Assembly: GCF_964194025.1 (NCBI RefSeq)
Contig: NC_134474.1
Coordinates: 62,434,001-62,498,000, forward strand
Direction of reading: 5' to 3'
From: Convolutriloba macropyga
Taxonomy: Eukaryota
Length of the DNA stretch: 64,000 nt
The number at the start of each line of letters is the position of its first letter. Positions within the stretch are counted from its first letter, which is position 1. Below are positions 1 to 27,969 of this stretch, piece after piece. The notes under the pieces are model-generated. The model saw only the letters and a list, made by a program, of their open reading frames with translations. It was not told where the DNA came from and did not search any database. The position numbers and the translations under genes were made by a program.

Positions 1-3000
1 GAGTTAAACCATCGTTTTTTTGGGTGAAAGTCACAAATGCTAACCGCTAAATTATCTGGGAGAGTAAAGGTAGATTGTCAAGTGTAATTGTATCATCTCG
101 GAGGGAATTGAATAGTGCAAAATTATTGAACTTTTTGGTTGTTATGCTTTTACTCATGAAGTAAAACTTCTCCTGGTGGGAGCTCAATCCGGGCTTTTTG
201 AGCGTGTGCTTAAAAGCATGCCCGATAGAGAACATGGGAGCTGAAATAGTATTTTCGTTTGTGGGAGCTGAATAAGTACTTTCGTTTGTGATCCCCAAAA
301 TATCATCATGGTAAGGAAAAATTTCCCAGACTGGGAGGGAAACCCGGGCCTTTTGGGTAAAAGCCACAAATCACAACCTCTAGACCATCTGGTATAGCAA
401 AGGTAGGTTGACAGGTGTAATTGAATTAACTCGGATGGAAGTTGGGAAGTTGTTTTACAAATAATTAGTTTCTGTTATATTAATCTCTGATTCTGTTTTG
501 ATCTGCTATTGTCATTGAGAAAAATTTTCCCCGACCGGGAGTTGAACCCGGGCCTTGAGGTTGAGAGCCACAAAAAACCTGACCGCTAGTCCAAATGGGA
601 GCTCGAGGAACGATTTTTTGTTTTTGTTCCCTTGAGCTCAGAGAATTTTCTGAGCTTGAAAATGGAGTTCAGGTTTTTTTCTGGTAAGCAGCTTTGCATT
701 TCGATTGAATATGGATATCATCATTTTCAGAAAATAAATTTCCAGACCAGGAGTTGAACCCTGGTTGTTTTGGGTGTAAGCCACAAATCCTAACCGTCTG
801 GTATAGCAAAAGTAGGTCGTCAGGTGTAATTGAATTAACTCAGAGGGAAGTTGAGTTTTACAAATAAGTAGTTTCTGTTGTAATAAACCCTTATTTTGCT
901 GCCATGTTTGTCATGCAAAAATTTTTTTCAGACCGGGATTTGAACCTGGGCCTTGTGCATGCCAGTTGCAAATTCTAATCCCTAGACCATCTGGTATAGC
1001 AAACGTAGGTTGTCAGGTGTAATTGAATTTACTCGGAGGGAAGTTTTACAAATGTTTAGTTTCTGTTGTTTTGAACTCTTATTTTGTTGCCATGTTTTTG
1101 TCTTTATTTTATTTTATTTCAGAAAAATTTTATTTCAGACGGGGAATTGAACTCTCGCCTTGTGGATGAAAGCCACAAATCATGACCGCTAGACTATCTT
1201 GGAGCTGGCGGATTGATTTTTTGCTTTTGTTCTCCTGATCCCAGGGAATGGTTCAGAGCTTGAAAATGGAGTTCAAGTTTTCTTTTTTTCTGGTACGCAG
1301 CGTTGCATTTCGATTGAATATTGATATTATCATTGTAAGAGAAAAAATCCCAGACCAGCATTTGAACCCGGGTTTTGTGTTTGGAAGCCGCTAATCATAA
1401 CCGCAAGTTCCATCTGGGACAGCGCAGGTAGATTGTCAAGTGTAATTGTATCAACTCGGAGGGAAGTTGAGTTGTACAACTGTTTAGTTACTGTTGTATT
1501 GAACTCTTTTTTTTTGTTGTGATGTTTTTGTCACGAGGAATTTTTTTTCCAGACCGGGAGTTGAACAAATCTTGATCGCTAAAACATCTGGGAGCTCGAG
1601 GAAGGATTTATCTTTTGTTCCCATGAGCCCAGAGAATGGTCAGGAGTTCGAAACTGGGGTTCCAGTTTAAATTTTTTCTGTTACGCAGCCTTGCATTTCG
1701 TTCGAATATGCATTTCATCATTATAAATAAAAAAAATTCCCTGACCGCGAGTTGGACCCGGACATTTTTGGTGAAAGTCACAAATTCTAATCTCTATACC
1801 ATCTGGTATAGCAAAGTTAGGTTGACATGTGTAAATGTATTAACTCGGAGGGAAGCGGAATTGTACAAATGTTTAGTTTCTGTTGTATTAAACTCTTATT
1901 TTCTTGCCATTTTTTTGTCATGAGAAAAAACAATTTTCAGACCAGCGTGTGAACCTGGGCCTTGTGGTTGAGCGCCACAAATCCTGACCGCTAGACCATC
2001 TGGTATAGCAAATGTAGTTTGTCAGGTGTAATTGAATTAGTTCAGAGGGAAGTTGAGTTGTACAAATGTTTAGTTACTATTGTATTGAACTGTTATTTTG
2101 TTGCCATGTTTTTGTCATGAAAAAAATTTCTTTCAGACCGGCATTTTAATCTGGGCCTTGTGGGTGAGAGCCACAAAACCTGACCGCTGGAGCATCTGGG
2201 AGCTGGAGGAATGATTTTTCGTTTTTTTCCCATGAGCCCTGAGAATGGTTCAGAGCTTGAAATTGAAGCTCAAGTTTTCATGTTTTCCACGCAGCCTTGC
2301 ATTTCGATTGACTATGCATTTCATCATTGTAAGAAAAAATTTCCTTGAACGCGAGTCGGACCCGGGCATTGATTTGTGGGTGATAGTCACAAATTCTAAC
2401 CTCTATATCATCTGGTATAGCAAAGGTAGGTTGTCAGGTGTAATCGAATCAACTCGGAGGGAAGTTTGGTTTTACAAATAATTAAATTCTGTTGTATTAA
2501 TATCTTATTTTGTTTTGATATGCTATTGTCATGAAGAAACATTTTCCCAGACCGGGAGTTGAAGCCGGGCCTTGTGGGTGAGAGCCACAAAACCTGACGG
2601 CTAGGCCATCTGGGTGCTCGAAGAACGGTTTTCTTTTTTATTCCCATGAGCCCAGAGAATGGTTCATAGATTGAAAATGGAAATCAGGTTTTCTGTTTTT
2701 CTGGTACGGAGCTTTGCATTTCGATTGAATACGGATATCATCATTGAACAGGAGTTAAAATTCCCAGAACAGGAGTTAAACCCTCGTTTTTTTGGGTGAA
2801 AGTCACAAATGCTAACCGCTAAATTATCTGGGAGAGTAAAGGTAGATTGTCAAGTGTAATTGTATCATCTCGGAGGGAATTGAATAGTGCAAAATTATTG
2901 AACTTTTTGGTTGTTATGCTTTTACTCATGAAGTAAAACTTCTCCTGGTGGGAGCTGAATCCGGGCTTTGTGAGCGTGTGCTAAAAGGCTTGCCCGATAG

Positions 3001-6000
3001 AGAACATGGGAGCTGAAATAAGTATTTTCGCTTGTGGGAGCTGAAATAAGTATTTTCGTTTGTGATCCCCAAAATATCATCATGGTAAGGAAAAATTTCC
3101 CCAATAGATTCTCTGCCCAAAATTCTGTCCAATAGATCATCTCAGCGCTGGAAGAAGTTTTTGAGTTTTTGCAGTTTTATACTTGTATGATTGTGTTATG
3201 GTTTTACCCATAAAGTAAAATTTCCCAGGCTGGAGTTGTTGTTGCGAGCTAAAAGTCCTGCCTGCGAGAACATCTGGTATCTAACAGCATGGTTTTCGTT
3301 TGTGATTCCCGACGTGTCGCTGAAGAGAAAACTTCCCAGACCTAGAGTCGAACCCGGGCCTTTTGAGTGAAAGCCAGATATCCTGACCGCTGGACCAACT
3401 GGGAGCGCGAAGATTAATTTTTTGTTTGATTCTATGTCTCAATTTTGAAATTGTGCAAATTTCAAGTTTTATAGTTTTAAACTCTAATTATTGTATTATT
3501 GTGCTTCTATATTATTGTATATTGTGCTTCTTAATCCTGAAGGAAATTTTTCTCAGACCGGGAGTTGAACCCGGTTCTTTGGGTGAGAGCCACAAATCTT
3601 TTTTCTGTATTTTATCTGGGACAGCAAAGGTATATTGTAAAATGTAATTGTATTGACTGGGAGGGATGTTGAATCATGCAAAATACTAGTTTTTGCAGTA
3701 TTAAACTTCTTTGGTTGTTATTTTTTTACTCATGAAGTAAAATTTTCCATGGCGGGAGATGATTATGGGCCTTGACAGCGCGAACCGATAAACCACCTGG
3801 CAGCTGAAATAAGTATTTCGTTTGTGATCCCCGAAAACTTGTGCGTGAAAGACAGAGATCCTTACCGCTAGACCTTAAGTGATAGCCAAGGTAGGTTGCC
3901 GGGTGTAATTGAAATAATTTTCCCTAGACCAGGATTTGAATCCAGACTTTTTGGGTGAAAGCCACAAATCCTAACCTCGCGAACATCTGGGACAGCAACT
4001 GTAGATTGTCAAGTGTAACTGTATCTACTCGGAGGGAAGTTGAATTGTATAAATTTCTAGTTTTTTTCAGTATTGAACTTCTTTTTGCTCTTATGCCTTT
4101 ATTCATGAAGTAAACCTTTCCCTGGTTGGAGTTGAATCCAAGCTTTTTGAGTGCGTGCTAAATTTCCTATCTGATAGACCATCTGGGAGCTGAACTTAAA
4201 TAATTTTTTTTGTTTGTGCTCAACGAAATGACGTTATGATGCGAAAAAATTTCCCTGACCGGGAGTTGAAACCGGACCTTGTGGTTGAAAGCCACAAGTC
4301 CTAACAGCTAGACCATCTGGGATAGAAAAGCTAGATGGTCAAGTGTAATTGTATCAGCTCGGAGGGAAGTTGAATCGTAAAAATTTCTTTTTTTTGAAGT
4401 GCTTAACTACTTTGGTTGTTATGCTTTTACGCAGGAATTAAACTTTTCCAGGCGGGACTTGAATACGGGCCTTGTGAATGCGTGCTGAATTTCCTGTCCG
4501 ATAGACCATCTGGAAATGAAACAAGTATTTTCGTTAATGCTGCCCGAAATGCCGTCATAATAAGAAAATATTTCCTAGACCGGGAGTCGAACGCGTGCCT
4601 CGTGGGTGAAAGCCGCAAATCCTAACCGCTAGACCATCTGCGACAGCAAAGGTAGATTGTAAAGTGTAATTGTATCAACTCGGAGGTATATAGAATCGTA
4701 CAAAGTCTTTGGTTTTTGTAGTATTGAGCTTCTTTGGTTGTTATGCTTTTACTCAAGAAGTAAAATTTCCCTTGGCGGGAGCTAAATCCAGGCTTTGTGA
4801 GTGCATGCTAACAGTCAAGCCCGATAGATCATCTGGGAACTGGAACAAGTATTTTCTTTAATGCTCCCCGGAATGCCGTCATGGTAAAAAATTCCCGGAC
4901 CGGGATTCGAACCCGGTCCTCGTGGGAGAAAGCCACAAATCCTAACCACTAGACCATCTGGGACAGCAAAGGTAGATTGTCAAGTGTAATTGTATCAACT
5001 TGGATGTATATAGAATCGTAAAAAGTTCTAGTTTTTGTAGTATTGAACTTCTTTGGTTGTTATGCTTTCACTCATGAAGTAAAAATTTCCCAGGCGGGAG
5101 TTGAATCCGGGCTTTGTGAATATGTGCTAAACTTCCTGTAAGTTAGACAACCTGGGAGCTGAAAGAATTTTTTTCGTTGGTGATCCTCGAAGCCGTGTGT
5201 GTGAAGGACACAAATCCTTATCGCTAGATCATCTCGGATAGCCCAGGTAGGTTGTCAGATGTTATTGAAAGAAAGTTTTCTGACCAGGAGTCGAACCCTG
5301 GCCTTGTGGTTGAAAGCTTAAAATCCTAACCTCGCGAACATCGACAGCAACTGTAGATTGTCAAGTGTAACTGTATCCACTCGGAGGGAAGTTGAATCGT
5401 ACAAATTTCTAGTTTTGCAGTATTAAACTTCTTTGGTTGTTATCCCTTTACTCATGAAAATAAAAATTTTTCCCAGGCGGCACTTGAATCCAGGCTCTGT
5501 GAGTGCGTGCTAAAAATCCCGCCCGATAGACCATCTGGGAACTGGAACAAGTATTTTCGTTAATGCTCCCAGGAATGCCGTCATGGTAAGACAAAATTTC
5601 CCAGAACGGGATTCGAACCCGCGCCTTGTTGGTGAAAGCCACAAGTCCTAACAGCTAGACCATCTGCGAGAGAAAAGGTAGATTGTCAAGTGTAATTTTA
5701 TCAGCTCGGAGGGAAGTTGAATCGTACAAATTTCTAGTTTTTGGTTGTTTAACTACTTTGGTTGTTATGCTTTTACGCAGGAATTAAACTTTTCCCAGGC
5801 GGGTCTTTTCCCAGGCAGTTTTTTTGTTTGTGCTCCCCGAAATGCCGTCATGGTACAAAAAACTTAGACCTTGTGGGTGAAAGCCACAAAGGATTAACGC
5901 TACCCACAAAGGATTAACGCTAAACCATCTGGGACAGCAACTGTTGGATGTCAAGTGTAATTGTATCAAGTCGGAGGGAAGTTGAATTGTACAAATTTCT

Positions 6001-8125
6001 AGTTATTGCAGTATCAAACTTCTTTGGTTGTTACGCTTTTACGCATGAAATAAAATTTTCCCAGGCACTTGAATCCGGGCCTTGTGAGTGCGTGCTGAAA
6101 TCCCGCTCGATAGACCGTCTGGGAACTGGAAAAACTATTTTCGTTTGTGGTCCCCGAAATGCCGTCATGGTAAAAAAAAATCCCAGACCGGTAGTTGAAC
6201 CCGGGCCTTGTGTTTGAAAGCCACAAATCCTAACCTCTACACCATCTGGGATAGCCAAGGTAGGTTCTCAGGTATAATTCCCAGACCAGAAGTCGAAGCC
6301 GGGCCTTGTGAAAGCCACAAATCCTCACCTCTCGATCATCTGGGACAGCAACTGTAGATTGTCAAGTATGACTGTATCAACTCAGAGGGAAGGTAAATCG
6401 TACAAATTTCTAGTTTTTGCCTTAATAAATTTTTTTGATAGTTATGCTTTTACTCATGAAGTAAAATTTTCCCAGGTCGGTATTGAGTCCGGACCTTGTG
6501 AGTGCCTGCTAAATTTCCTGTCCGATAGACTATCTGGGGGCTGAAGTAAGTTTTGTCGTTTGTGCTCCCCAAAATGCCGTCATGGTAAGACAAATATTCC
6601 CAGGCCGGGATTCGAACCCTGGCCTTGTGTGTGAAAGCCACACATCCTGGCCGCTAGACCATTGAAACAGCAAAGGTAGGTTGTCAAGTGTAGTCGTATC
6701 AACTCGAGGGGAAGTTGAATTGTACAAATTTATAGTTTTTGCAGTATTAAGCTTCTTTGGTTTTTATGCTTCTACTCAAGAAGTAAAATTTTTCCAGGCG
6801 GGAGTTGAGTCCGGGCCTTGTGAGTGCGTTCAAAAATTTCTCTCCGATAGACCATCTGGCAGCTGAAATAAGTTTGTCGTTTGTGCTCCCCAAAATGCCG
6901 TCATGGTAAGACAAATATTCCCAGGCCGGGATTCGAACCCTGGCCTTGTGTGTGAAAGGCACACATCCTGGCCGCTAGACCCTCTCCGACGAGAAGGGTA
7001 GATTGTCAAGTGTAATCGTATCAAAGCCCGAAGGAAGTTGAATCGTACAAATTTCTGGTTTCTTCAGTAATAGTCTTTTTTGGTTGTTATGCTTTTACTC
7101 AGGAAGTAAAATTTTTCCAGCTGGGAGTTGAATCTGGGCCTTGAGTGCCTGCTAATTTTCATGCCCGATAGACCATCTGGGAGCCGGAATAAGTATTTTC
7201 ATTTGTGCCTCCCGAAATGCCGTCATGGTAAGAGAAAGTTTCGCAGTCCGGGATTCGAACCCTAGCCTTGTGAGTGAAAGCCATAAATCCTAACCGCTAG
7301 ACTATCTGGGACAGCAAAGGTAGCTGGTCAAGTGTAATTGTATTTGCTCGAAGGGAAGTTAAATCGTACAAATTTCACTTTTTTGCTGTGTTAAACTTTT
7401 TTGGTTGTTATGCTTTTACGCATGAATGACAATTTTCCCAGGCGGAGTTGAATCCGGGCCTTGTGAGTGCGTGCTAAAAATTGCTGTCTGATAGGCCACC
7501 TGACCTGGGAGCTGAAATAAGTATTTGAGTGTGTGATCCCCGAAGCCTTGTGCGTGAAGGACAAAAATCCTTACCGCTAGACGATATGGGATAGCCAAGG
7601 TAGGTTGTCACGTTTAATTGAAAGAAAATTCCCGGACCGCGAATCGAACCCGGGCTTTGTGGGTGATAGCCACAAATCCTAACCTTGCGAACATCTAGGA
7701 CAACAACTGTAGATTGTCATGTGTAACTGTATCAACTTGGAGGGAAGTTGAATCGTACAAAATTCTAGTTTTTGCAGTATTAAACTTCATTGGTTGTTAT
7801 TCTTCTACTCATGAAGTAAAACTTAATTACGGGCCTTGTGAGTGCATGCTGAGATTACTGTCTGATAGACCATCTGGGAGCTGGTATAAGCTTTTTTGTG
7901 CTCCCCGAAACGCCGTCATGGTAAGAAAAAACTTCTCAGACCGGTAGTCAAACCCTGGCCCTGTGGGTGAAAGCCACAAATCCTGACCGCTAGACCCTCT
8001 GGGTATGAAAGGTAGATTGTCAGGTGTCATCCGGATCAACTCGGAAGGAAGTTGAATTGTACAGTTTTCCCGTTTTTGCATTAATAATATTTTTTGGTTG
8101 TTATGCTTTTACTCATTAAGTAAAA

Positions 8126-10406
8126 CTAGCAGGCCTGCAGAAACATATCACAAGAAAAATCTTTCAACCGAATAGAAGATTTAAAAGAAATTAGGATATG
8201 TGTTTCGTGCCAACTCCGGCTCGAGCCCATATGCCCCTCATTTACCAGGCATAGGTGTTAACGCCTATGCTACCGATGCGTATTTTCCGTTTTTAACCCT
8301 ATGTAAGAGTAAATTTCTGTTAATCGACGTTTTTGGTTTTGCCGAGTTGCATGTTTAAGGAGCGCTAAAACTTGTGCAGATAACGATCTTATATTTGGTG
8401 GCAAAGCGCGTTTATTATCTATTGTCTATTCCTAATTCTGAATCAGCAATTCATGTCAAGGGCTTTTATGGCTCGTCTGTTTTGGCAAGCTTAATGAGCG
8501 CAAAACATCAGCAGACTGGGAGACAAAATATGAAAGAAGAAAGATTAGAAAGAAAAGAAAAACGAAAAAAAAACGAGCGAAAGAAAAAGAAAAAGAAAGT
8601 CAATTAGACTGGAACCCCTGCTTCTCGCTTAAAAGTCATGGATCTTATCCTCTACGCTAATTTTACCGATTGCTCACGCCTATTGAACTTTATAATGCAG
8701 AGAGAGTGAAGGATTAAAGAACGAAAGTAGAACTAACGAATAAACGGAAAGAATTGAAGAACGGAAAAAAAGACAGCCAAATACCAATTGTTTAAATCAA
8801 GTACATGCTTTTCAACCCTTAAGTGGGCTTGAACTCATGCCCCTCGCTTCACAGCCATAGATTTTATCCATTGCGCTACCGACGCCTGTTGCTTTTGTCT
8901 ATTGAACTGATTACATACGCAAAAGGTTATCGTTGGCAATTTTTTCTCACTGGCTTTTCCTAAGCTGCACGCCTAATGAGCAAAAAAAAACATGATCATG
9001 AGCCCGTATCAGGAGCATAGGCATGGTGATGTAGGCTGCATGTTTATGGACCATTTAAACATGAAAATAGGAACGCTGTTAATAATTGCGCTCAATAGCA
9101 ACTTTTGTTCAACATGTTGAGAGGGAGACAATGAAATGCAGAAAGATGAAGGAATGAAGAAGGAAGTACAGGAAAAAGGAAATAAAGAAGGAAATAAATA
9201 AAAAAGAAAACCTAACCCCATTTTTTTAAACGCCACTCTATAATGCATCGTTTTCTGCATCTGCTCGGACTTGACCCATGCTCCTCGATTCACAGCCATA
9301 AGTTAATTCCCTTGCTCTACCGACTACTTGCTTTTGTCTATTGAATTGAATACATACGCAGATGTTTGGTCATTGGCTACTTTTGTCTCGCTGTTTTTTG
9401 CTCAGCTGCATTCTTAATGATCACAAAAAAATGTGCAGATCGAAAGCTTAAGCAGCATGTTTAAGGATCGTTAAAGCACGTGAAGACAAGAGCGCTGTTA
9501 ACTATTCCGCGAAAATGCAATGCAGAAAGAATGAGAGAATAAAGAACGAAAGGAAGATATAGAAAACGATTAAAAGGAAAGAGATGACGAATGGAAGAAA
9601 AAGATATACAAATCCCAAATATTTACCCCAATAAATATTTATCAATTTCCGCTCCTACTCGGGCTGGAACCCATGCCCATCGCTTCACTGTCATAGGTTT
9701 AGTCCCTTGCGCTATCGAAGCTTGTTGTTTTTGTCTACTGAACTGACTACATATGCAAATTGCTGGTCATTGGCTTTTTGTCTCGCTTGTTTTTGTTAAG
9801 CTGCATTCTGAATGATTACAAAAATATTCGCAGATCGGGAGCTTAAGCATGGTGGAGCAGGCTGCATGTTTAAGGATCGTTACAGCGTATCAAGACAGGA
9901 GCGCTGTTAACTATTGCGCCCAAGTGCGATTTACATTTAAAATAATAGACAAATAGATGAAAGGGAGAGATTGAAATGCAGAACGAAATAGGACATATAG
10001 AACGAAAGGAAGATATAGAAAACGATTAAAAGGAAACAGATGAAGAACAGAAGAAAAAGATATCCAAATCCAAGATTTTTACCCCAGTACACTAAGCATC
10101 CATTTCCGCCCTTACTCAGGCTTGAACCCATTCCGATCGCTTCACAGTCATAGGTCTAATCCCTTGCGCTCCCGAAACCTGTTGCTTCTGTCTATACAAC
10201 TTACTACATGCAAAAATTTCTGGTCATCGGCTTTTTGTCTCGCTTGTTTCTGTTAAGCTGCATTCCTAATGAGCACAAAAACTTTTTCAGATCGGGAGCT
10301 TAAGCATGGTGGAGCAGGCTGCATGTTTAAGGATCGTTAAAGCATGTTAAGATAGGACAGCTGTTAACCATTGCGCTCAAATGCGACTTAGATTTAAAAA
10401 TATAGA
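8126..10406 (-). mobile_element. Non-autonomous Helitron (2,281 bp) made of internal tandem units with tRNA-like heads
   Basis: On the minus strand it starts TCTATATT and ends CTGCAGGCCTGCTAG. It is inserted exactly between A and T of the array consensus gaagtaaaa|tttttccaggc with no TSD (A|TC...CTAG|T). Internal ~400-460-bp repeats are present. Confidence 0.8.
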
Positions 10407-16499: not shown

Positions 16500-19400
16500 A
16501 GGTGGGAGTTGAATCCGGGCCTTCACGAGTGAGTGCGTGCTAAATTTCCTGTCCAATAGACCATCTGGGAGCTGAAATAAGTTTTTTCGTTTGTGCTCCC
16601 CGAAAGGCCGTCATGGTAAGAAAAAACTTCCCGGACCGGGAGTTGATCCCGGGCCTTGTGGGTGAAAGCAAAAAATTCTTTCCTCTAGACCATCTGGGAC
16701 AGCAAATGCAGATTGTCAAGTGTAGTTGTTCTAAGTCGGAGGGAAGTTGAATCGTACAAATTGTTTGTTTTTGCAGTTTTAATCGTCTTTGGTTGTTATC
16801 CTTTTACTCGTGAAGTGTACTTTCCCAGGTAGGAGTTGAATCCGGGACTTGTGAGTGCGTGCTAACATTCCTGTCCAATAGACAACCTGGGAGTTTAAAT
16901 AAGTATTTCGTTTGTGATCCCCGACAGCTTGTGTGTGAAAGACACAAATCCTTGCCGCTAGACCGTCTGGGATAGCCAAGGTAGGTTGCCAGGTGTAATT
17001 GAAAAAAAAATTCCCAGACCAGGAGTCGAACACGGACCTTGTGGGTGAAAGCCTAAAATTTCAACCTCGCAAACATCTGCGACAGCAACTGCAGATTGTC
17101 AAGTGTAACTGTATCCACTCGGAGGGAAGTTGAATCGTACAATTTTCTAGTTTTTGCGTTGTTAAACTTCTTTGGTTGTTATGCTTTTGCTCGTGAAGTA
17201 AAATTTTCCCAGGTGGGAGCTGGATCCAGGATTTATGAGTGCTTGCTAAAAATCCCACCCGATAGACCATCTGGAAACTGGAATAAGTGTTCTTGTTTGT
17301 GCTCCCCGAAATGCCGTCATGGTAAGAACAAACTTCTCAGACCGGGAGTTGATTCCGGGTCTGCTGGGTAAAATCCACAAATCCTACCCTCTCGACCATC
17401 TGGGACATTAACTGTAGATTGTCAAGTGTAACTGTACGAACTCGGAGGTATGTTGAATCGTTCAAATTTCTAGTTTTTGCCGTATTAAACTTCTAAACTT
17501 CTTTGGTTGTTATCTTTTACTCATGAAGTAAAGTTTTCCCAGGTGGGAGCTGAATCCGATTCTTGTGAGTGCGTGCTACATTTGCTGTCCAATAGACCAT
17601 CTGGGAGCTGAAATAAGTTTTTTCGTTTGTGCTCCCCGAAAGGCCGTCATGGTAGGAAAAAACTTCCCGGACCGAAAGCAAAAAATTCTATCGGCTAGAC
17701 CATCTGGGAGAGCGAATGCAGATTGTCAAGTGTAATTGTATTAACTCGGAGCGAAGTTGAATCGTACAAATTTTTTGCTTTTGCAGTTTTAAAATTTTTG
17801 GTTGTTATCCTTTTACTCGTGAAGTGTACTTTCCCAGGTAGGAATTGAATCCGGGACTTGTGAGTGCGTGCTAACATTCCTGTCCAATAGACAACCTAGG
17901 CGTTTAAATAAGTATTTCGTTTGTGATCCCCGTAAACTTGGGCGTGAAAGACACAAATCCTTACCGCTAGACCGTCTGGGATAGCCAAGGTAGGTTGCCA
18001 GGTGTAATTGAAAGAAAATTCCCGGACCAGGAGTCGAACACGGACCCTGTGGTTGAAAGCTTAAAATCCTAACCTCGCGAACATCGACAGCAACTGTAGA
18101 TTGTCAAGTGTAACTGTATCCACTCGGAGGTAAGTTGAATCGTACAAATATCTAGTTTTTGCATTGTTAAACTTCTTTGTTGTTATGCTTTTGGTCATGA
18201 AGTAAAATTTTCCCAGGTGGGAGCTGAATCCAGGATTTGTGAGTACTTGCTAAAAATCCCACCTGATAGACCATCTGGGAACTGGAATAAGTATTCTTGT
18301 TTGTGCTCCCCGAAATGCCGTCATGGTAAGAAAAAACTTCCCAGAACGGGCGTTGTTCCCGGTTCTGCTGGGTAAAATCCACAAACCCTATCCTCTCGAC
18401 CATCTGGGACATTAACTGTAGACTGTCACGTGTAACTTTACGAACTCGCAGGTATGTTGAATCGTTCAAATTTCTAGTTTTTGCCGTATTAAAATTCTAA
18501 ACTTCTTTGGTTGTTATCCTTTTACTCATGAAATAGAGTTTTCCCAGGTGGGAGTTGAATCCGCGCCTTGTGAGTGCGTGCTAAATTTCCTGTCCAATAG
18601 ACAACCTGGGAGTTTAAATAAGTATTTCGTTTGTGATCCCCGACAACTTGTGCGTGAAAGACACAAATCTTTGCCGCTAGACCGTCTGGGATAGCCAAGG
18701 TAGGTTGCCAGGTGTAATTGAAAAAAAAATTCCCAGACCAGGAGTCGAACAAGGACCTTGTGGGTTAAAGCCTAAAATCCTAACCTCGCAAACATCTGCG
18801 ACAGCAACTGCAGATTGTCAAGTGTAACTGTATCCACTCGGAGGGAAGTTGAATCGTACAAATTTCTAGTTTTGCATTGTTAAACTTCTTTGGTTGTTAT
18901 GCTTTTGCTCGTGAAGTAAAATTTTCCCAGGTGGGAGCTGGATCCAGGATTTGTGAGTGCTTGCTAAAAATCCCACCCGATAGACCATCTGGGAACTGGA
19001 ATAAGTGTTCTTGTTTGTGCTCCCCGAAATGCCGTCATGGTAAGAACAAACTTCTCAGACCGGGAGTTGATCCCGGGTCTGCTGGGTAAAATCCACTAAT
19101 CCTACCCTCTCGACCATCTGGGACATTAACTGTAGATTGTCAAGTGTAACTGTACGAACTCGGAGGTATGTTGAATCGTTCAAATTTCTAGTTTTTGCCG
19201 TATTAAACTTCTAAACTTCTTTGGTTGTTATCCTTTTACTCATGAAGTAAAGTTTTCCCAGGTGGGAGTTGAATCCGAGCCTTGTGAGTGCGTGCTAAAT
19301 TTCCTGTCCAATAGACCATCTGGGAGCTGAAATAAGTTTTTTCGTTTGTGCTCCCCGAAAGGCCGTCATGGTAGGAAAAAACTTCCCGGACCGGGAGTTG

Positions 19401-22400
19401 ATCCCGGGCATTGTGGGTGAAAGCAAAAAATTCTATCGGCTAGACCATCTGGGAGAGCGAATGCAGATTGTCAAATGTAATTGTATTAACTCGGAGCAAA
19501 GTTGAATCGTGCAAATTTTTTGCTTTTGCAGTTTTAAAATTTTTTGGTTGTTATCCTTTTACTCGTGAAGTGTACTTTCCCAGGTAGGAATTGAATCCGG
19601 GACTTGTGAGTGCGTGCTAACATTCCTGTCCAATAGACAACCTAGGCGTTTAAATAAGTATTTCGTTTGTGATCCCCGTAAACTTGGGCGTGAAAGACAC
19701 AAATCCTTACCGCTAGACCGTCTGGGATAGCCAAGGTAGGTTGCCAGGTGTAATTGAAAAAAAAATTCCCAGACCAGGAGTCGAACACGGACCTTGTGGG
19801 TGAAAGCCTAAAATCCTAACCTCGCAAACATCTGCGACAGCAACTGCAGATTGTCAAGTGTAACTGTATCCACTCGGAGGGAAGTTGAATCGTACAAATT
19901 TCTATTTTTGCATTGTTAAACTTCTTTGGTTGTTATGCTTTTGCTCGTGTAGTAAAATTTTCCCAGGTGGGGGCTGGATCCAGGATTTGTGAGTGCTTGC
20001 TAAAAATCCCACCCGATAGACCATCTGGGAACTGGAATAAGTGTTCTTGTTTGTGCTCCCCGAAATGCCGTCATGGTAAGAACAAACTTCTCAGACCGGG
20101 AGTTGATCCCGGGTCTGCTGGGTAAAATCCAAAAATCCTGCCCTCTCGACCATCTGGGGCATTAACTGTAGATTGTCAAGTGTAACTGTACGAACTCGGA
20201 GGTATGTTGAATCGTTCAAATTTCTAGTTTTTGCCGTATTAAACTTCTAATCTTCTTTGGTTGTTATCTTTTACTCATGAAGTAAAGTTTTCCCATGTGG
20301 GAGTTGAATCCGAGCCTTGTGAGTGCGTGCTAAATTTCCTGTCCAATAGACCATCTGGGAGCTGAAATAAGTTTTTTCGTTTGTGCTCCCCGAAAGGCCG
20401 CCATGGTAGGAAAAACTTCCCGGACCGGGAGTTGATCCCGGGCATTGTGGGTGAAAGCAAAAAATTCTATCGGCTAGACCATCTGGGAGAGCGAATGCAG
20501 ATTGTCAAGTGTAATTGTATTAACTCGGAGCGAAGTTGAATCGCTCAAATTTTTTGCTTTTGCAGTTTTAAAATTCTTTGGTTGTTATTCTTTTACTCGT
20601 GAAGTGTACTTTGCCAGGTAGGAATTGAATCCGGGACTTGTGAGTGCGTGCTAACATTCCTGGCCAATAGACAACCTCGGCGTTTAAATAAGTATTTCGT
20701 TTGTGATCCCCGAAAACTTGGGCGTGAAAGACACAAATCCTTGCCGCTAGACCGTCTGGGATAGCCAAGGTAGGTTGCCAGGTGTAATTGAAAGAAAATT
20801 TCCGGACCAGGAGTCGAACACGGACCTTGTGGTTGAAAGCTTAAAATCCTAACCTCGCGAACATCGACAGCAACTGTAGATTGTCAATTGTAACTGTATC
20901 CACTCGGAGGGAAGTTGAATCGTGCAAATTTCTAGTTTTGCATTGTTAAACTTCTTTGGTTGTTATGCTTTTGCTCGTGAAGTAAAATTTTCCCAGGTGG
21001 GAGCTGAATCCAGGATTTGTGAGTACTTGCTAAAAATCCCACCTGATAGACCATCTGGGAACTGGAATAAGTATTCTTGTTTGTGCTCCCCGAAATGCCG
21101 TCATGGTAAGAAAAAACTTCCCAGAACGGGCGTTGTTCCCGGTTCTGCTGGGTAAAATCCACAAACCCTATCCTCTCGACCATCTGGGACATTAACTGTA
21201 GACTGTCACGTGTAACTTTACGAACTCGCAGGTATGTTGAATCGTTCAAATTTCTAGTTTTTGCCGTATTAAAATTCTAAACTTCTTTGGTTGTTATCCT
21301 TTTACTCATGAAATAAAGTTTTCCCAGGTGGGAGTTGAATCCGAGCCTTGTGAGTGCGTGCTAAATTTCCTGTCCAATAGACCATCTGGGAGCTGAAATA
21401 AGTTTTTTCGTTTGTGCTCCCCGAAAGGCCGTCATGGTAGGAAAAAACTTCCCGGACCGGGAGTTGATCCCGGGCATTGTGGGTGAAAGCAAAAAATTCT
21501 ATCGGCTAGACCATCTGGGAGAGCGAATGCAGATTGTCAAATGTAATTGTATTAACTCGGAGCAAAGTTGAATCGTACAAATTTTTTGCTTTTGCAGTTT
21601 TAAAATTTTTTGGTTGTTATCCTTTTACTCGTGAAGTGTACTTTCCCAGGTAGGAATTGAATCCGGGACTTGTGAGTGCGTGCTAACATTCCTGTCCAAT
21701 AGACAACCTAGGCGTTTAAATAAGTATTTCGTTTGTGATCCCCGTAAACTTGGGCGTGAAAGACACAAATCCTTACCGCTAGACCGTCTGGGATAGCCAA
21801 GGTAGGTTGCCAGGTGTAATTGAAAGAAAATTCCCGGACCAGGAGTCGAACACGGACCTTGTGGTTGAAAGCTTAAAATCCTAACCTCGCGAACATCGAC
21901 AGCAACTGTAGATTGTCAAGTGTAACTGTAACCACTCGGAGGTAAGTTGAATCGTACAAATATCTAGTTTTTGCAGTGTTAAACTTCTTTTGTTGTTATG
22001 CTTTTGGTCATGAAGTAAAATTTTCCCAGGTGGGAGCTGAATCCAGGATTTGTGAGTACTTGCTAAAAATCCCACCTGATAGACCATCTGGGAACTGGAA
22101 TAAGTATTCTTGTTTGTGCTCCCCGAAATGCCGTCATGGTAAGAAAAAACTTCCCAGAACGGACGTTGTTCCCGGGTCTGCTGGGTCAAATCCACAAACC
22201 CTATCCTCTCGACCCTCTGGGACATTAACTGTAGACTGTCACGTGTAACTGTACGAACTCGCAGGTATGTTGAATCGTTCAAATTTCTAGTTTTTGCCGT
22301 ATTAAACTACTAAACTTCTTTGGTTGTTATCCTTTTACTCATGAAGTAAAGTTTTCCCAGGTGGGAGTTGAATCCGAGCCTTGTGAGTGCGTGCTAAATT

Positions 22401-22560
22401 TCCTGTCCAGTAGACCATCTGGGAGCTGAAATAAGTTTTTTCTTTTGTGCTCCCCGAAAGGCCGTCATGGTAGGAAAAAACTTCCCGGACCGGGAGTTGA
22501 TCCCGGGCCTTGTGGGTGAAAGCAAAAAACTCTATCCGCTAGATCATCTGGGACAGCAAA
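16500..22560. repeat. Higher-order repeat of ~1,030-1,036 bp (six full tRNA-like copies plus one 5'-half copy), about 6 copies, one with a ~320-bp unit deletion
   Basis: The marker gacagcaactg(c/t)agattg recurs at ~17082, 18086, 18802, 19838, 20866 and 21899. ORFs 18877 and 19913 are nearly identical at +1036. Confidence 0.85.
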
Positions 22561-23847
22561 TGCAGATTGTCAAGTGTAATTTTTTTAACTCGGAGTGAAG
22601 TGTAATTGTATGAACTCGGAAGGAAGTTGAATCGTACAAAATTATTAAATTTTTTGGTTGTTGGGCTTTTACTCATGAACTAGAATTTCAATATGCGGGA
22701 GTTGAATACTGGCCTTGAGAGTGCTTGCTAAGAATCCAGCTTAATAGACCATCTGGGTGCAGGAATAAGTTTTTTTCGTTGGTGATCCCCGAAATTTTTT
22801 TTATGTTAAGAAAAACTTCCCTGAACGGGAGTCGAAACGGAGCCCTGTGGGTGAAAACCACAAATGCTTACCGCTACTCCTTCTGAGACAGCAAAGGTAA
22901 TTTGTCAAGTTTATTTCTATCAACTCAGAGGGAGGTTGATTGGTACAAATTTCTAGTTTTTGCAGTATTAAATATGTTTGACTGCGTTATGTTTTTACTC
23001 GTGAAGTGAAATTTCCCCGAGCGGTAGTTAAATCTAGTGTTTGTTGGTGCGAGCTAGAACTCCTGCCCGACAGAGCAACTGGGAGCTGACAGAGTCATTT
23101 TTTCTGGTACGCAGCATTGCATTTCAATATGCATATCCTTGTAGGAAAAAAATCCCAGAATTAGATTAGAACCCAGGCCATGTGGGTAGAAGACACAAAT
23201 CCTAACGGCTAGACTATCTGGGACAGCAAAGGTAGATTGTCAAGTGTAATTGCATCAACTCGGAAGGAAGTTGAATCGTACAACTTTCTAGTTTTTGTAG
23301 TATTAAAATTTATTGTTTGTTATGCTTTTACTCATGAAGTAGAATTTCACCAGGTGGCAGTCGAATCCGGGCCCTGTGGATGCGAGCCAAAAATACTGTT
23401 CGATAGATCATCTGGGAAATGAAATAACTATTTTCGTTTGTGATCCCCGAAATGTTTTCATGGTAAAAAATCTTCCCATACCAAGAGTCTATCTAGGGCT
23501 TTCTTGACAAGAGCCACAAATCCTGTTCGCTAGACCATCTGGGAGCTCGAAGAATGGTTTTCTTTTGAGATACCTTGAGCCCATAGAATGGTTCAGAGCT
23601 TCAAATTAAAGTTCTATTTCCTTCTTCTGGTTTGCAGCCTTGCATTCCGACTGAGTATGCGATCGTTATTGTAAGAAAGAATGTTCCTAGAACGGGAGTC
23701 GAATCTGGCTCTTGTGAGCGAAAGCCACAAATCCTAACTACTGGACCATCTTGTAAAGCAAAGCTAGATTTCCACGTGTAATTGAATTAACTCAGAGGGA
23801 AGTTTTGTCGGAGGGAAGTTTACAAATCTCTAGTCTTTGTATTATTA

Positions 23848-24370
23848 ATAGCCGCCTTCATCTTCTCAGCCGGCTATTATAGCGCTCCTATTTTTTTTTA
23901 CTTCGTCTAACTTTTTTTTCGCCTTACCCATTTTGCCGCTTTTTTGATATTTTGCGTGAAATCTTTTTGACTTCTCTAGGCTAGTTAAACTGTCATTCTG
24001 ATCAAAGTCCTTTTAAACAGCAGCTGCTCTGCAAAGCAATTCAAAATGAAGAGAGTCAGTATAACAAAAATTAAAGTCAGAAATAGAAACGGGATAAACA
24101 CATAAAGCCCATTTTTAGATGCCCGGTACTTGAACTTTGTTCTAATAAGTTTTAGTTACTATCTATTTTGCTTATTGGTATTGATACTGGATCCTGTAGA
24201 CTCTCACTGAGAGACAGGAGTATGTTCAATTACGAAATGACATAAAAATAAATCGCACTTAAAAAGGTTTTTGTTCAAAAATCAATTTTTGATGATATTT
24301 TCTTTTCTATCAATCCCGATAGAGTTATGGGAATCAACGGTGGCTATTTTCTGGCAATCTGCCGGGTATC
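23848..24370 (+). mobile_element. Helentron/DINE-1-like non-autonomous element (family A) inserted in the array
   Basis: 5' subTIR ATAGCCGCC with adjacent partial inverted repeat CGGCTAT. 3' subTIR GGTGGCTAT (24339-24347) is followed by hairpin CTGGCA-ATC-TGCCGG. The array spacer resumes on both sides. Homologous to 39491-39541 plus 41709-42012. Confidence 0.75.
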
Positions 24371-24732
24371 TTATTTTGGTGTGTTGTGTTTTTATTCATA
24401 ATGTAAAATTTTTCCATACCGGGTTTTGATCCCGAGCCTTGTGGGTGAAAGCCACAAATGCCAATTTTTGAACTATTCTTTGTATCAAAGATGGATTTTC
24501 AAGAGTAATTGAATCAACTCAGGGAGAATTTTAGTCGTACCAATCTCTAGTCTTTGTGTTTTTTAACTCTTATTTTGTTGTGTTGTGTTTTTTGATCATG
24601 ATGTAAAATTTTCTCAGACTGAAATTAGAACCCGGTCTTTGCGTTTGAAAGCCACACATCGTACTCTGCTAGACCATCTGGGAGTTAGAATTTTTGTTTT
24701 TAGTTTGTGATACCATGATCCCAGAGAATTGT

Positions 24733-24914
24733 TCAGAGCTGGAGACTGGAAATCAATTTTTATTTTTATTCTTGTATGCAGCCTCGCATTTTGATTAAAA
24801 ATGCATATCGTTATGTTAGGATCCTTTCTAACATAACGATATGCATTTTTAATTGAAATGCGAAGCTGCATACAAGAATAAAAATAAAAATTGAACTCCA
24901 GTCTCCAGCTCTGA
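24733..24914. repeat. Long fold-back palindrome (~87-bp arms, 8-nt loop) of array spacer sequence
   Basis: tcagagctggagactgga...catatcgttatgttag-gatccttt-ctaacataacgatatg...tccagtctccagctctga. Confidence 0.9.
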
Positions 24915-26836
24915 TATGCTTTTGTCATAAAGAAAAATTTTCAGACCGCTGTGATATGCTTTTGTCATGAAGAAAAATTTTCGCTGAACAGGGGATGAAA
25001 AAATTTAAGTTATGCGGCTGTACATTTTGATTGAATATGCACATCGTCCTTGTAAAAAAAAATCCCAGAACGAGTCGAAACACGTCCCTATGGGTGATAT
25101 CCACAATTGCTAACTAATAGACGATCTTGGATAGCTCAGGTAAATTGTCAATTGTAATTGAGTCAAGTTTGAGGTCAAGTTTGAGTTTAGTCGTACAGAT
25201 CCCCTGTTTTTTAGTATTTAACTCTTATTTTGGTGTTTTTTTTAGTCATGAAGTAAAGTTTTCCCGGACCAGAAGTTGAACCCGGAGCTCGTGGGTGAAA
25301 GACAAAACTCCTGACCGGCCGACGATCTGGGAGCGGGAAGAATTTATTTCTTTGTAATCCCAAGAGCTCAGAGAATTAAATGGGAGTTTAAATTTTTATT
25401 TTTGTGGTATGCAGCCATGTGTATTGACTGATTGATTATGAAAATCGTCATTGTAAGAAAAAGTTCCAGAGCGGGAGTCGAAACCGAGCCTTGTGGGTGA
25501 AAGCAACAAATCCCAACTACTAGACTAAGATTGTCAAGTGTAATTGATTCTTCTCGGAGGGAAGTTTTCGTTTGTGTTCCCATGAGCCCACAGAAGGGTT
25601 CAGAGATGGAAATTGGAACTCGCAAGTTTCATTTTTGTGTTTTATGCAGCCTTGCGTTTCGATTGAATATGCATGTCGTCATTGTAAGAAAAGTTCCTGG
25701 ATCAGGTGTCGGACCCGGGACTAGTGGGTAAAATACTAAAGGTAGATGGTCAAGTGCAATTGTATTAACTAGAGGGGAATTTGAATCGTAAAAGTTTTGT
25801 AGTTATCGTAATATTAATATTTTCTGCTGTGTTGCTTTTATTCGTGAAATAAATTTTCCCAATTCGGAAGTTGAAACCGGGCCTTCTGGGTTTGAGCCAA
25901 AAATGCTGCCCTCTAGACCATCTGGGAGCTGAGGAAATTTTTCGTTTCTGATCCCATGAGCTCAAAAAATGATGCACAATTTTTAGTAGTTTGTGTTTTC
26001 ATTTTTTTGAGGCAGCTTTGGATTGCAATTGAATATGCATATTGTCATGGTGAGAAAAATGTTTTCAAACAGAAATTCGAACCTGGTATTGTGAGTGAAA
26101 GCCTCAAATCCTAACCTGTAGACCATCTGGCTAGGAAAGTCTAATCTTTGAATTGTAATTGTATCGGAGTCGTTCAATTTTTCAATATAAAACTAATATC
26201 AATTTTGGTTTGTTGTGCTTTTAATCATAAAGACAAGTTTTCCCAGACCTGGAGTTGAACCCGTGCCTTGTGGCTGAGGGCCACAAGAAATCACCGCTCG
26301 AAAATATAGGAGCCGGAAAAATTAATTTCGTTTGTGATCCCATGAGCTCAGAGAGTTGTTCAGAGCGTGAAATGGGAGAATGACTTTCCTTTTTGTGCTA
26401 CGCAGCTTTGGATTTTGATTGCATACGCATATAATGGGCCTACGAACATAGACCTTAAAAATCCTAACTAATAGACTATCTTGAATAGCAAGAGGTAGAT
26501 GGTCAAGAGTAATTGAAACAACTTGGAGAGAAATCAAGTCTTACAAGTCTCTTGTTTTTTAGTATTAAACTCTTATTTTGGTGTGTTGTATTTTTAGTCA
26601 AGAAGTATAGTTTTCCCAGACCTAAAGTTGAACCCGGGCCTTGTACGTGAAAAACAAATGTCCTGACTACTAGACTATCTTGGATAGCAAAAGCAGATTG
26701 TCGGGTGTAGTTGAATGAACTCGGAGGGAAGTTGAGTTGTACAATTTTCTAGTTTATGTAGTATTAAACTCTTCTCGTGGTGTATTGTGATTGTAGTCAT
26801 GAAGTAAAGTTTCCCCAGACTAGAAGTTTAACCCGG

Positions 26837-27969
26837 GCCTTGTGGGTAAGAGCCACAAATCCATACCTCTAGATCATCTGGGAGCTGGGAGAATTTTTTC
26901 CGTTTGTGATCTCATGAGCTCAGCGAATTTTTCAGAGCTTTATATGGGAGTTTCATTTTTTAAAAAATTTTTGTGGTATGCAGCCTTGCATTTTGATTGA
27001 ATATGCATATCGTCGTGGTAGGAAAGAAGTACTCAGACCGGGAGTCGAACAATGGCCAGTCTTCAAATGTGTTCAGTTTTTGCGGTGTGGAGCTTTGCAT
27101 AATGGTTTAATGTGCATGTAGTCTTGAGAAGTCGAATGTTTACAGACCATGAGTTGAACCCAGGGTTTTTAAAATCAGAATCACAAATTCTAGCCTGTAG
27201 ACTATGTTTAATATGGTAGCTTGAATGTCAACTGTAATCGGTTTAGGTTGGAGATAATAGAACTGGTTGTAGTACGGGTTGTAGTTCAGCCTTTCATTTT
27301 TTTGCAATATGGAGCTTTTCAATGTGCATATAGTCATGAGAAATAATTAATTTTTCTCGGTCGGGAAGTCGAACCCGGGTCCTTTAAATAGGCGTTACTC
27401 GCCTTGTGGGTAAGAGCCACAAATCCATACCTATAGATCATTTGGGAGCTGGGAGAATTTTTTCCGTTTGTGATCTCATGAGCTCAGCGAATTTTTCAGA
27501 GCTTTATATGGGAGTTTCATTTTTTAAAAAATTTTTGTGGTATGCAGCCTTGCATTTTGATTGAATATGCATATCGTCGTGGTAGGAAAGAAGTACTCAG
27601 ACCGGGAGTCGAACAATGGCCAGTCTTCAAATGTGTTCAGTTTTTGCGGTGTGGAGCTTTGCATAATGGTTTAATGTGCATGTAGTCTTGAGAAGTCGAT
27701 TGTTTACAGACCATGAGTTGAACCCAGGGTTTTTAAAATCAGAATCACAAATTCTAGCCTGTAGACTATGTTTAATATGGTAGCTTGAATGTCAACTGTA
27801 ATCGGTTTTTAGGTTGGAGATAATAGAACTGGTTGTAGTACGGGTTGTAGTTCAGCCTTTCATTTTTTTGCAATATGGAGCTTTTCAATGTGCATATAGT
27901 CATGAGAAATAATTAATTTTTCTCGGTCGGGAAGTCGAACCCGGGTCCTTTAAATAGGCGTTACTCGCC
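26837..27969. repeat. Near-perfect 564-bp tandem duplication at the array end
   Basis: gccttgtgggtaagagccacaaatccatacc occurs at 26837 and 27401; both copies end ggcgttactcgcc (gcc microhomology). Confidence 0.9.

What the first reader, a model, noticed from the sequence alone, without database searches (positions are those of the whole stretch)
1..27969. A ~28-kb-plus tRNA-Glu-derived macrosatellite, antisense inside a tolloid/BMP1 intron
Seen: apart from the inserted elements, the 28 kb upstream of an internal phase-0 tolloid exon is a same-orientation array of tRNA-Glu-like copies on the minus strand. Many copies keep A and B boxes and a T-run terminator, but only a few fold properly. Known: tolloid needs upstream astacin, CUB1-2, EGF1 and CUB3 exons, none of which is in the window, so the array should be intronic. 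Inference: the pre-mRNA would carry over 100 antisense copies of tRNA-Glu, including the 5'-half sequence typical of tRNA fragments. Possible consequences are a tRNA/tRF sponge, a source of dsRNA or siRNA from convergent Pol II and Pol III transcription, or a dense TFIIIC/Pol III chromatin domain in a dorsoventral patterning gene.
Basis: partly seen in the sequence, partly recalled or inferred. Interest (0 to 1): 0.8.

Follow-up and report, generated by a model that had tools for sequence, protein, structure and literature searches.

The report
Decaying tRNA-Glu satellite in tolloid-like intron
About 150 head-to-tail copies of a glutamate tRNA gene, nearly all dead, fill at least 28 kb just upstream of an internal exon of a conserved tolloid-like gene; it looks like ordinary satellite DNA that grew from a tRNA gene and shows no sign of a function.

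Summary
Window 19-27,979 carries about 150 tRNA-Glu-derived segments, all on the minus strand. None lies on the plus strand or beyond about 28 kb. The array runs off the left edge.

The oldest unit is about 197 bp, a tRNA plus spacer. The core unit is a 322-bp dimer: a tRNA-Glu(UUC)-like part and an already-dead tRNA-like part. A 1,033-bp higher-order repeat occupies 16.3-22.8 kb. A Helitron-like element interrupts the array at 8,127-10,405.

The copies decay neutrally. The tRNA parts are no better conserved than the spacers, and stems diverge as fast as loops. Broken stem pairs number 248, against 11 compensated. Only 12 copies keep A box, B box and T-run, and only two identical copies are perfect.

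The intronic reading is indirectly supported. mRNA contigs from a related species splice the exon at 28,235 to up to 1.95 kb of upstream transcript that is absent from the window. Codon changes are 21 synonymous to 4 non-synonymous.

The sponge, dsRNA and TFIIIC ideas remain untested. No RNA run of this organism was found.

Earlier unchecked notes of this scan list other tRNA arrays elsewhere in this genome, so this looks like a genome-wide habit rather than something specific to tolloid.

The parts
1..3600 (-). Left, older part of the array. It consists mostly of ~197-bp monomers (tRNA-Glu-like part plus ~125-bp spacer) and is cut by the window edge.
   Evidence: nhmmer spacings are about 197-216 bp with low scores. 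TRF reports period 197 at 1770-2199. The first copy, at 19-61, is only a partial match next to the window edge, and the array runs on past that edge.
3601..8126 (-). 322-bp dimer units: an A part that is tRNA-Glu(UUC)-like, then a degenerate B part 127 bp later, then 195 bp to the next A.
   Evidence: TRF reports periods 320-322. The A/B alternation is seen and the unit sequence was read.
8127..10405 (-). Helitron-like insertion that interrupts one unit. It is not part of the array.
   Evidence: The array unit stops and resumes exactly at the T-run after a B part. On the minus strand the insert starts with TC and ends with a GC-rich palindrome followed by CTAG, and it sits between A and T. The unit blast shows no coverage here.
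10406..16280 (-). Best-preserved core: 322-bp dimers, a repeated 99-bp A-A' duplication and a 2.3-kb segmental repeat. It holds the only perfect copies.
   Evidence: Rfam scores 60.3 bits at 10899-10970 and 13211-13282 (identical copies), 59.6 at 15515-15586 and 54.1 at 14217-14288. 10437-11398 and 12744-13712 are 95% alike. TRF reports period 99.
16281..22800 (-). Higher-order repeat of 1,033 bp (three dimers, one carrying an extra partial A).
   Evidence: In the self-blast, HOR copies are 89-95% alike over 2.4-3.8 kb at lags of 1,033, 2,069, 2,758 and 3,794 bp. The nhmmer spacing pattern recurs.
22801..27979 (-). Right, decayed part of the array, with ~200-bp spacing and gaps. It includes a recent 564-bp tandem duplication at its end.
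   Evidence: nhmmer scores are low, 11-40. 26837-27412 and 27401-27979 are 98.8% alike. The last T-arm fragment was read at about 27,915-27,969.
28235..28382 (+). Internal exon of the tolloid-like gene, encoding the end of a CUB domain plus a calcium-binding EGF domain.
   Evidence: There is an AG acceptor at 28233-28234 and the frame reads [13 protein letters not shown]. The relative's mRNA contigs begin matching here and carry 637-1,952 nt of further upstream sequence. They join to 29,389 across a GT..AG intron.
29389..29502 (+). Exon encoding the first half of CUB4.
   Evidence: Joints 28380>29387 and 29500>33207, each with the cut 2 places further right and GT..AG ends, appear in all four RNA runs. 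tblastn agrees.
33209..33435 (+). Exon encoding the second half of CUB4.
   Evidence: The joint is seen. The donor GT at 33436 was read. The loose end behind 33436 matches the start of the next exon at 33934.
33934..34116 (+). Exon encoding the first half of CUB5.
   Evidence: tblastn gives colinear matches. AG and GT borders were read.
35719..36075 (+). Exon encoding the second half of CUB5 and a tail running to a stop codon. It is probably the last coding exon.
   Evidence: tblastn matches 35716-35910. The frame and the stop codon were read. The 3' limit has not been checked with RNA.

Best explanation
This is satellite DNA that grew out of a tRNA-Glu(UUC) gene. A cassette of tRNA gene, T-run terminator and ~125-bp spacer (about 197 bp) was multiplied head to tail, most likely by unequal crossing-over or replication slippage. 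An internal duplication then made a 322-bp dimer, and its second tRNA part had already lost its anticodon arm before the dimer itself was amplified. Later, a 1,033-bp block of three dimers and a 2.3-kb segment were amplified again in the middle of the array, leaving the oldest and most decayed units at both edges. The copies now drift neutrally, with faster loss at CpG sites. Two identical copies, and perhaps two to four more, may still be transcribed by Pol III and add to the tRNA-Glu pool. The rest are pseudogenes. The array lies antisense in a large intron (at least 28.2 kb) of a conserved tolloid-like gene and is probably just transcribed through and spliced out. What is shown: the anatomy, the orientation, the neutral decay, the layered amplification, and the conserved internal exon. 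What is inferred: the amplification mechanism, the intronic position in this organism, and the array's inertness.
For: All 150 segments share one orientation, and their spacers are homologous. B aligns to A over its whole length, with its anticodon arm the most changed part. Flanks carry 197-bp monomers and the core carries 322-bp dimers. HOR copies are 89-95% alike, whereas neighbouring dimers are 67-80% alike. In 33 aligned dimers, identity to the consensus is 0.863 for the tRNA part, 0.871 and 0.891 for the two spacers, and 0.855 for B. CpG columns score 0.82 against 0.88 for the rest. In 58 distinct full-length A copies, stems diverge 0.172 and loops 0.166. There are 248 broken pair cells against 11 compensated, only 3 copies keep all 21 pairs, and the anticodon is TTC in 32 of 58. 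Only 12 of 150 keep A box, B box and T-run. Intron position: no tolloid-like coding matches lie in 1-28,100. The relative's mRNA is spliced at 28,235 to up to 1,952 nt of upstream sequence that is not in the window. Codon changes are 21 synonymous to 4 non-synonymous. Unchecked notes of this scan list other tRNA arrays in the same genome.
Against: There is no RNA, Pol III or chromatin data for this organism, so inertness is inferred from sequence decay alone. The few intact copies could matter for tRNA supply. The upstream exons were not seen in this genome, so the intronic position rests on a relative's mRNA and on the absence of those exons from the window. The assembly of the array could not be checked with long reads.
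Confidence: 0.75

Rival explanations
1. It is a working tRNA-Glu gene cluster kept for dosage, like the tandem tRNA clusters of zebrafish, Xenopus, Arabidopsis or Entamoeba. The pseudogenes would be by-products of turnover.
For: Two identical perfect copies score 60.3 bits, and a few more score 54-60 bits with A box, B box and T-run. The isodecoder has a fully paired cloverleaf.
Against: The tRNA part is no better conserved than the spacers. Stems decay as fast as loops, with 248 broken against 11 compensated pair cells. The dimer was amplified after its B half had already died. Only about 2-6 of 150 copies are plausible genes.
Confidence: 0.1
2. The intronic antisense tRNA-Glu copies would act as a tRNA or tRF sponge, or give dsRNA or siRNA through convergent Pol II and Pol III transcription, or form a TFIIIC/Pol III chromatin domain that tunes tolloid.
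For: The array is antisense to a conserved, expressed gene. Up to 22 B boxes remain, clustered mainly in 10.4-16 kb. tRNA arrays acting as chromatin boundaries have been proposed elsewhere, for example the human 1q23.3 tRNA repeat (abstract of PMC4041453, listed).
Against: Decay is neutral in every part of the unit. There are no inverted copies. Most copies are 8-18% diverged from the intact tRNA. The relative's RNA gives no depth on 27,500-28,096. Similar arrays are noted across this genome in unrelated places (unchecked).
Confidence: 0.04
3. It is a pile-up of tRNA-Glu-derived SINE insertions, or an array carried and amplified by a Helitron, rather than a locally grown satellite.
For: Helitron-like elements are present in this window, one of them inside the array. 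Unchecked scan notes mention Helitron-borne tRNA-like cassettes in this genome.
Against: Spacing is regular, the spacers are homologous, 150 of 150 copies share one orientation, and there is a higher-order repeat structure. The units read showed no poly(A) or LINE-like tails and no target-site duplications. I saw no TC...CTRR junction between units there either. The one Helitron is a clean later insertion into a unit.
Confidence: 0.04
4. The array is real but not intronic. The tolloid-like exons in this genome would be a truncated or rearranged gene copy, or the junction would be a misassembly.
For: The upstream exons were not seen in this genome. The linkage evidence comes from a related species.
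Against: The exon has an intact acceptor and an open frame. Comparison with the relative's mRNA shows 21 synonymous against 4 non-synonymous codon changes across three exons. The runs that hold the adjoining 27,800-36,200 stretch almost completely are probably DNA.
Confidence: 0.07

Closest known systems
Tandem tRNA gene arrays of eukaryotes: the Arabidopsis chromosome 1 Ser/Tyr/Tyr cluster and tRNA-Cys clusters, the Entamoeba tRNA arrays, and the zebrafish and Xenopus clusters
   Same: They are head-to-tail, same-orientation repeats of a short unit holding a tRNA gene plus spacer. They grew by local duplication and hold many silent or decaying copies. Sources: abstracts of PMC2886086 and PMC10701932, abstracts of PMC12308677 and PMC2652664, and text of PMC2888827 read.
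   Different: Here a single isoacceptor dominates and nearly all copies are pseudogenes. The amplified unit is a dimer with one half already dead. The array also lies antisense in an intron of a protein-coding gene.
Satellites derived from Pol III genes or SINEs (for example SINE-derived satellites of scaled reptiles)
   Same: A tRNA-related sequence was converted into tandem satellite DNA (abstract of PMC10702118, listed).
   Different: The source here is a tRNA gene cassette with its own terminator and flank. It is not part of a retroposed SINE, because no SINE body or tail is present.
Human 1q23.3 tRNA variable-number tandem repeat
   Same: It is a large, copy-number-variable tandem repeat carrying tRNA genes, with a proposed chromatin-boundary role (abstract of PMC4041453, listed).
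   Different: According to that abstract, the human unit is 7.3 kb, GC-rich and binds CTCF. Here the units are 197-322 bp, with one decayed tRNA type and no evidence of boundary function.
Genome-wide tDNA excess in some animals (for example more than 17,000 tRNA genes and pseudogenes in Nematostella vectensis)
   Same: There is lineage-specific, rapidly turning-over expansion of tRNA genes and pseudogenes, mostly in parallel orientation within clusters (PMC2888827). Unchecked notes of this scan report many tRNA arrays in this genome too.
   Different: The organism here was not identified. Its tolloid-like exons are only 35-51% identical to the sea-anemone tolloid P0047, so it is not that gene.

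Membership tests
tRNA-gene-derived tandem array (tDNA satellite) | Head-to-tail copies in one orientation with homologous spacers | tested here: met
   150 of 150 segments and 161 of 161 unit hits lie on the minus strand. Spacers align across 33 units at 0.87-0.89 identity to the consensus.
tRNA-gene-derived tandem array (tDNA satellite) | The unit contains a sequence recognised as a tRNA by a covariance model | tested here: met
   27 Rfam RF00005 matches reach the gathering score, the best at 60.3 bits. ARAGORN finds 33 tRNAs, mostly Glu(UUC).
tRNA-gene-derived tandem array (tDNA satellite) | Layered amplification or higher-order repeats, as in satellites | tested here: met
   There are 197-bp monomers, 322-bp dimers, a 1,033-bp HOR at 89-95% identity and a 2.3-kb segmental repeat at 95%.
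tRNA-gene-derived tandem array (tDNA satellite) | The array is physically real and its size is confirmed by long reads | not testable with these tools
Functional Pol III type-2 tRNA gene | Complete cloverleaf with the expected anticodon | tested here: not met
   This fails for the array as a whole. Only 3 of 58 distinct full-length A copies keep all 21 stem pairs, and the B copies have lost the anticodon arm. It is met only for 10899-10970 and 13211-13282 and a few near-perfect copies.
Functional Pol III type-2 tRNA gene | A box, B box and a downstream T-run | tested here: not met
   12 of 150 segments have all three. B copies have none.
Functional Pol III type-2 tRNA gene | Transcription and processing to a mature tRNA | not testable with these tools
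   No RNA run of this organism was found.
tRNA-derived SINE | tRNA-related head, unrelated body and LINE-like or A-rich tail, dispersed with target-site duplications | tested here: not met
   Units abut one another with shared spacers. No tails or duplications appear in the units read, and every copy sits within one array.
Macrosatellite | Basic repeat unit in the kilobase range (definition from my own knowledge) | tested here: not met
   The basic units are 197 and 322 bp. Only the higher-order repeat is 1,033 bp.
Tolloid/BMP1 (astacin-CUB-EGF metalloprotease) | C-terminal EGF2-CUB4-CUB5 in that order | tested here: met
   Five exons are colinear with residues 769-1047 of P0237 (1,066 aa) and 701-998 of P0165 (1,008 aa), at 37-59% identity. 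Pfam shows astacin plus CUB and EGF domains in the related queries.
Tolloid/BMP1 (astacin-CUB-EGF metalloprotease) | N-terminal astacin protease domain and CUB1-3/EGF1 in the same transcript | tested here: inconclusive
   None is in the window. The relative's mRNA contig has up to 1,952 nt upstream of this exon, and its last 30 nt read as the end of a CUB domain. The rest of the contig was not shown.

The most novel reading that the evidence does not exclude
The antisense tRNA-Glu array may be more than passenger DNA. Its remaining B boxes (up to 22, mainly in 10.4-16 kb) could recruit TFIIIC or Pol III inside the tolloid-like intron, or the spliced-out intron could supply antisense-tRNA-Glu RNA. 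Either would couple expression of a patterning protease to Pol III activity or to tRNA-Glu and tRF levels. The other intronic tRNA arrays noted in this genome would then be further cases of the same regulatory device.
Probability: 0.04. Interest if true: 0.75.

Novelty: new member of a known kind. Interest (0 to 1): 0.3.

Why it matters
This is a clean, datable example of how a tRNA gene turns into satellite DNA: monomer, then a dimer with one dead half, then a higher-order repeat. It also shows that a conserved developmental gene tolerates at least 28 kb of such DNA in one intron. The practical value lies mainly in annotation. tRNA counts for this genome will be inflated by such arrays, and gene models must span them. 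If several introns in this genome really carry tRNA arrays, the genome would be a good place to test whether clustered Pol III promoters affect Pol II genes. Nothing here shows that they do.

Tried and rejected
- **RNA of this organism.** Two run searches gave only probable DNA runs of organism A and small RNA runs of a relative. Transcription of the array could therefore not be tested. Reads were laid on the exon junctions.
- **Upstream tolloid exons in the window.** tblastn with 269 CUB, astacin and tolloid proteins found nothing significant below 28,100. The 30-nt end of the relative's upstream exon is absent from the window even with 3 mismatches.
- **More flank beyond the left edge.** Exact-product look-ups of three array ORFs were not on record.
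- **The organism's own tolloid protein.** It was not among the best 120 homologues of the sea-anemone tolloid P0047. The whole-library search with one CUB exon was swamped by multi-CUB proteins.
- **Organism identity.** It was not determined. The BEL/Pao RT has 80-90% relatives only in an unnamed ENA assembly, and the nearest named hit is Convolutriloba macropyga at 64%. The closest named tolloid-like hits are from an echinoderm and a horseshoe crab, at 37-59%.
- **This isodecoder in metagenome contigs.** Two scans gave 0 matches.
- **MFE folding of single copies.** It does not return cloverleaves even for the perfect copy. I therefore relied on covariance-model scores and explicit pair counts.
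- **SINE pile-up and Helitron-carried array.** Both were rejected on the anatomy.
- **Earlier findings.** The search stopped answering.
- **Literature.** The first search was wasted on terms that were too loose.
Full report
**1. What is there**

The first 28 kb of the window is a tandem array derived from a tRNA-Glu gene.
- ARAGORN tRNAs, all on the minus strand between 323 and 26,883. Twenty-three of them are Glu (21 with anticodon UUC and 2 with CUC).
- Rfam's tRNA model gives 27 matches at or above its gathering score. All are on the minus strand and none lies beyond 26.7 kb.
- blastn with the best copy gives 93 hits: none on the plus strand and none beyond 27,614.
- nhmmer with the two tRNA-like parts of the unit gives 150 non-overlapping segments from 19 to 27,769. 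A last T-arm fragment lies at about 27,915-27,969.
- The copy at 19-61 lies next to the window edge, and the array runs on past that edge, so it is longer than what is seen here.
- The rest of the window (28-64 kb) has no tRNA-like sequence on either strand.

**2. Anatomy of the unit**

Read on the minus strand, the core unit is about 322 bp and has four parts:
- An A part of 72 nt that is a tRNA-Glu(UUC)-like sequence followed by a T-run.
- A 55-bp spacer.
- A B part of about 73 nt, followed by another T-run.
- A 123-bp spacer leading to the next A.

B aligns to A over its whole length, with its anticodon arm the most changed part. It is therefore a dead paralogue of A, and the unit is a dimer.

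At both ends of the array (1-3,600 and about 23,500-27,979) the spacing is about 197-216 bp. There the unit is A plus the long spacer only. This looks like the ancestral monomer.

Three further features sit in the centre:
- A 99-bp A-A' duplication recurs three times.
- A 2.3-kb segment is repeated at 95% identity.
- A 1,033-bp higher-order repeat fills 16.3-22.8 kb. Its copies are 89-95% alike, whereas neighbouring dimers are only 67-80% alike.

The youngest layers are in the middle and the oldest at the edges, which I take as the usual pattern for a satellite that grows by unequal exchange. The one exception seen is a 98.8% duplication at the right end (26,837-27,979). The array has no inverted copies apart from one 182-bp palindrome.

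**3. Are the copies genes?**

Two identical copies, at 10,899-10,970 and 13,211-13,282, score 60.3 bits and have all 21 stem pairs, anticodon UUC, A box, B box and a T-run. Copies at 14,217-14,288 and 15,515-15,586 are close to that.

Beyond these, decay is general:
- By strict patterns, 21 segments keep an A box, 22 keep a B box, 15 keep both, and 12 keep both plus a T-run. None of the 50 B parts keeps either box.
- In 33 aligned dimers, identity to the consensus is 0.863 for the A tRNA, 0.871 and 0.891 for the spacers, and 0.855 for B. The tRNA is therefore not protected relative to the spacer.
- CpG columns are less conserved than the others, 0.82 against 0.88.
- Among 58 distinct gap-free A copies, stems diverge as fast as loops (0.172 against 0.166). 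There are 248 broken pair cells against 11 kept by double change. Only 3 copies keep every pair, and the anticodon is TTC in 32.

This is neutral decay. Because B is as uniform between units as A, B was already dead when the dimer was amplified. The amplification was therefore not simply selection for more tRNA genes.

**4. The neighbouring gene and the 'intron' claim**

Five plus-strand exons lie downstream of the array: 28,235-28,382, 29,389-29,502, 33,209-33,435, 33,934-34,116 and 35,719 onward. They are colinear with EGF2-CUB4-CUB5 of tolloid/BMP1 proteins at 37-59% identity. Examples are residues 769-1047 of a 1,066-aa protein and 701-998 of a 1,008-aa protein. They are only 35-51% identical to the sea-anemone tolloid P0047. 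I therefore call the gene tolloid-like rather than naming an orthologue.

None of the 269 CUB, astacin or tolloid queries matches anything significant in 1-28,100 or beyond 36,200.

No RNA run of the organism itself was found. Four small RNA runs of a related species hold the gene, and laying them on 27,500-33,460 gave the following:
- One contig per run joins exon 1 to exon 2 to exon 3 across GT..AG introns.
- The same contig carries 637 to 1,952 nt upstream of the exon at 28,235 that match nothing in that stretch.
- The last 30 nt before the junction read as the end of a CUB domain (..FHTDDSIEKK|GFQLTYF).
- That 30-mer is absent from the whole window even with three mismatches.

Applying the listed differences to the window's codons gives 21 synonymous and 4 non-synonymous changes. 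The exons in this genome are therefore under purifying selection and are not a dead fragment.

Taken together, the preceding exon must lie more than 28.2 kb upstream, beyond the window. The array then fills that intron, antisense to the gene. This remains an inference for this organism, because its own upstream exons and transcripts were not seen.

**5. The proposed consequences**

The sponge, dsRNA and TFIIIC-domain ideas cannot be tested with the data available. Several observations speak against a dedicated function:
- Every part of the unit decays neutrally.
- Intact B boxes are scarce.
- There are no inverted repeats.
- The relative's RNA gives no depth on the array's last 600 bp. This is weak evidence, because the species differs and the copies there are decayed.
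- Notes of this scan (unchecked AI notes) list other tRNA arrays in the same genome. These include one said to fill an intron of an unrelated gene and a tRNA-Arg array of more than 52 kb.

A genome-wide tendency to amplify tRNA cassettes explains this locus without any link to tolloid.

**6. Comparison with what is known**

- Tandem tRNA gene arrays and large lineage-specific excesses of tRNA pseudogenes are documented. PMC2888827 reports mostly parallel orientation within clusters and more than 17,000 tDNAs in one sea anemone.
- Arabidopsis has a Ser/Tyr/Tyr array that is largely silenced, and tRNA-Cys clusters (abstracts of PMC2886086 and PMC10701932, and of PMC12308677).
- Entamoeba keeps nearly all its tRNA genes in arrays (abstract of PMC2652664).
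- Humans have a 7.3-kb tRNA-bearing repeat with a proposed boundary role (abstract of PMC4041453).
- SINE-derived satellites are known in reptiles (abstract of PMC10702118).

This locus is another member of that kind. Its particular traits are a single isoacceptor, a dimer with one dead half, clear layering, and an antisense intronic position.

**7. Verdict**

The functional speculation is unsupported. I rate it as a new member of a known kind with modest interest.

Noticed in passing
window 8127-10405 (minus strand): The element interrupting the array has textbook Helitron ends. It starts with 5'-TC and ends with a GC-rich palindrome (GCAGGCCTGC) followed by CTAG. It is inserted between A and T of the unit's T-run, with no loss of array sequence. 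Inside it, TRF reports a 457-bp repeat at 9519-10406.
   Followed up: partly
window 1-27800, plus strand: The tolloid-sense strand of the array carries 41 perfect GT[AG]AGT 5'-splice-site-like hexamers against 1 on the other strand. They appear to come mostly from the ..ACTCAC.. motif of the B part. The same strand has 18 AATAAA and 29 ATTAAA motifs. Whether these decoy sites matter for processing of the long intron is unknown.
   Followed up: no
window 26837-27979: A 564-bp tandem duplication at 98.8% identity lies at the decayed right end of the array. It is much younger than its surroundings and ends about 250 bp from the exon.
   Followed up: no
window 24733-24914: A 182-bp palindrome (91% self-complementary) is the only inverted repeat inside the array region. 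Weaker copies of one arm lie at 26932-27027 and 27496-27591.
   Followed up: no
window 28511-28551: A ~40-bp motif beginning with a C-run in the first intron downstream is matched by many unrelated RNA contigs of the related species, with loose ends on both sides. It is therefore a dispersed, transcribed short repeat. Similar C-run motifs recur elsewhere in the window and show up as proline-run ORFs.
   Followed up: no
window 52200-59000: A BEL/Pao LTR retrotransposon has gag-like, protease, RT and integrase ORFs broken into pieces. Its RT has 80-90% identical relatives on long contigs of an unnamed ENA assembly (ERZ25071359), and the nearest named hit is an acoel protein at 64%.
   Followed up: partly
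window 1-27979: CpG observed/expected is 0.73-0.78 in the array against 0.85-0.88 in the rest of the window. CpG columns of the unit are the least conserved. This is consistent with germline methylation of the array.
   Followed up: partly
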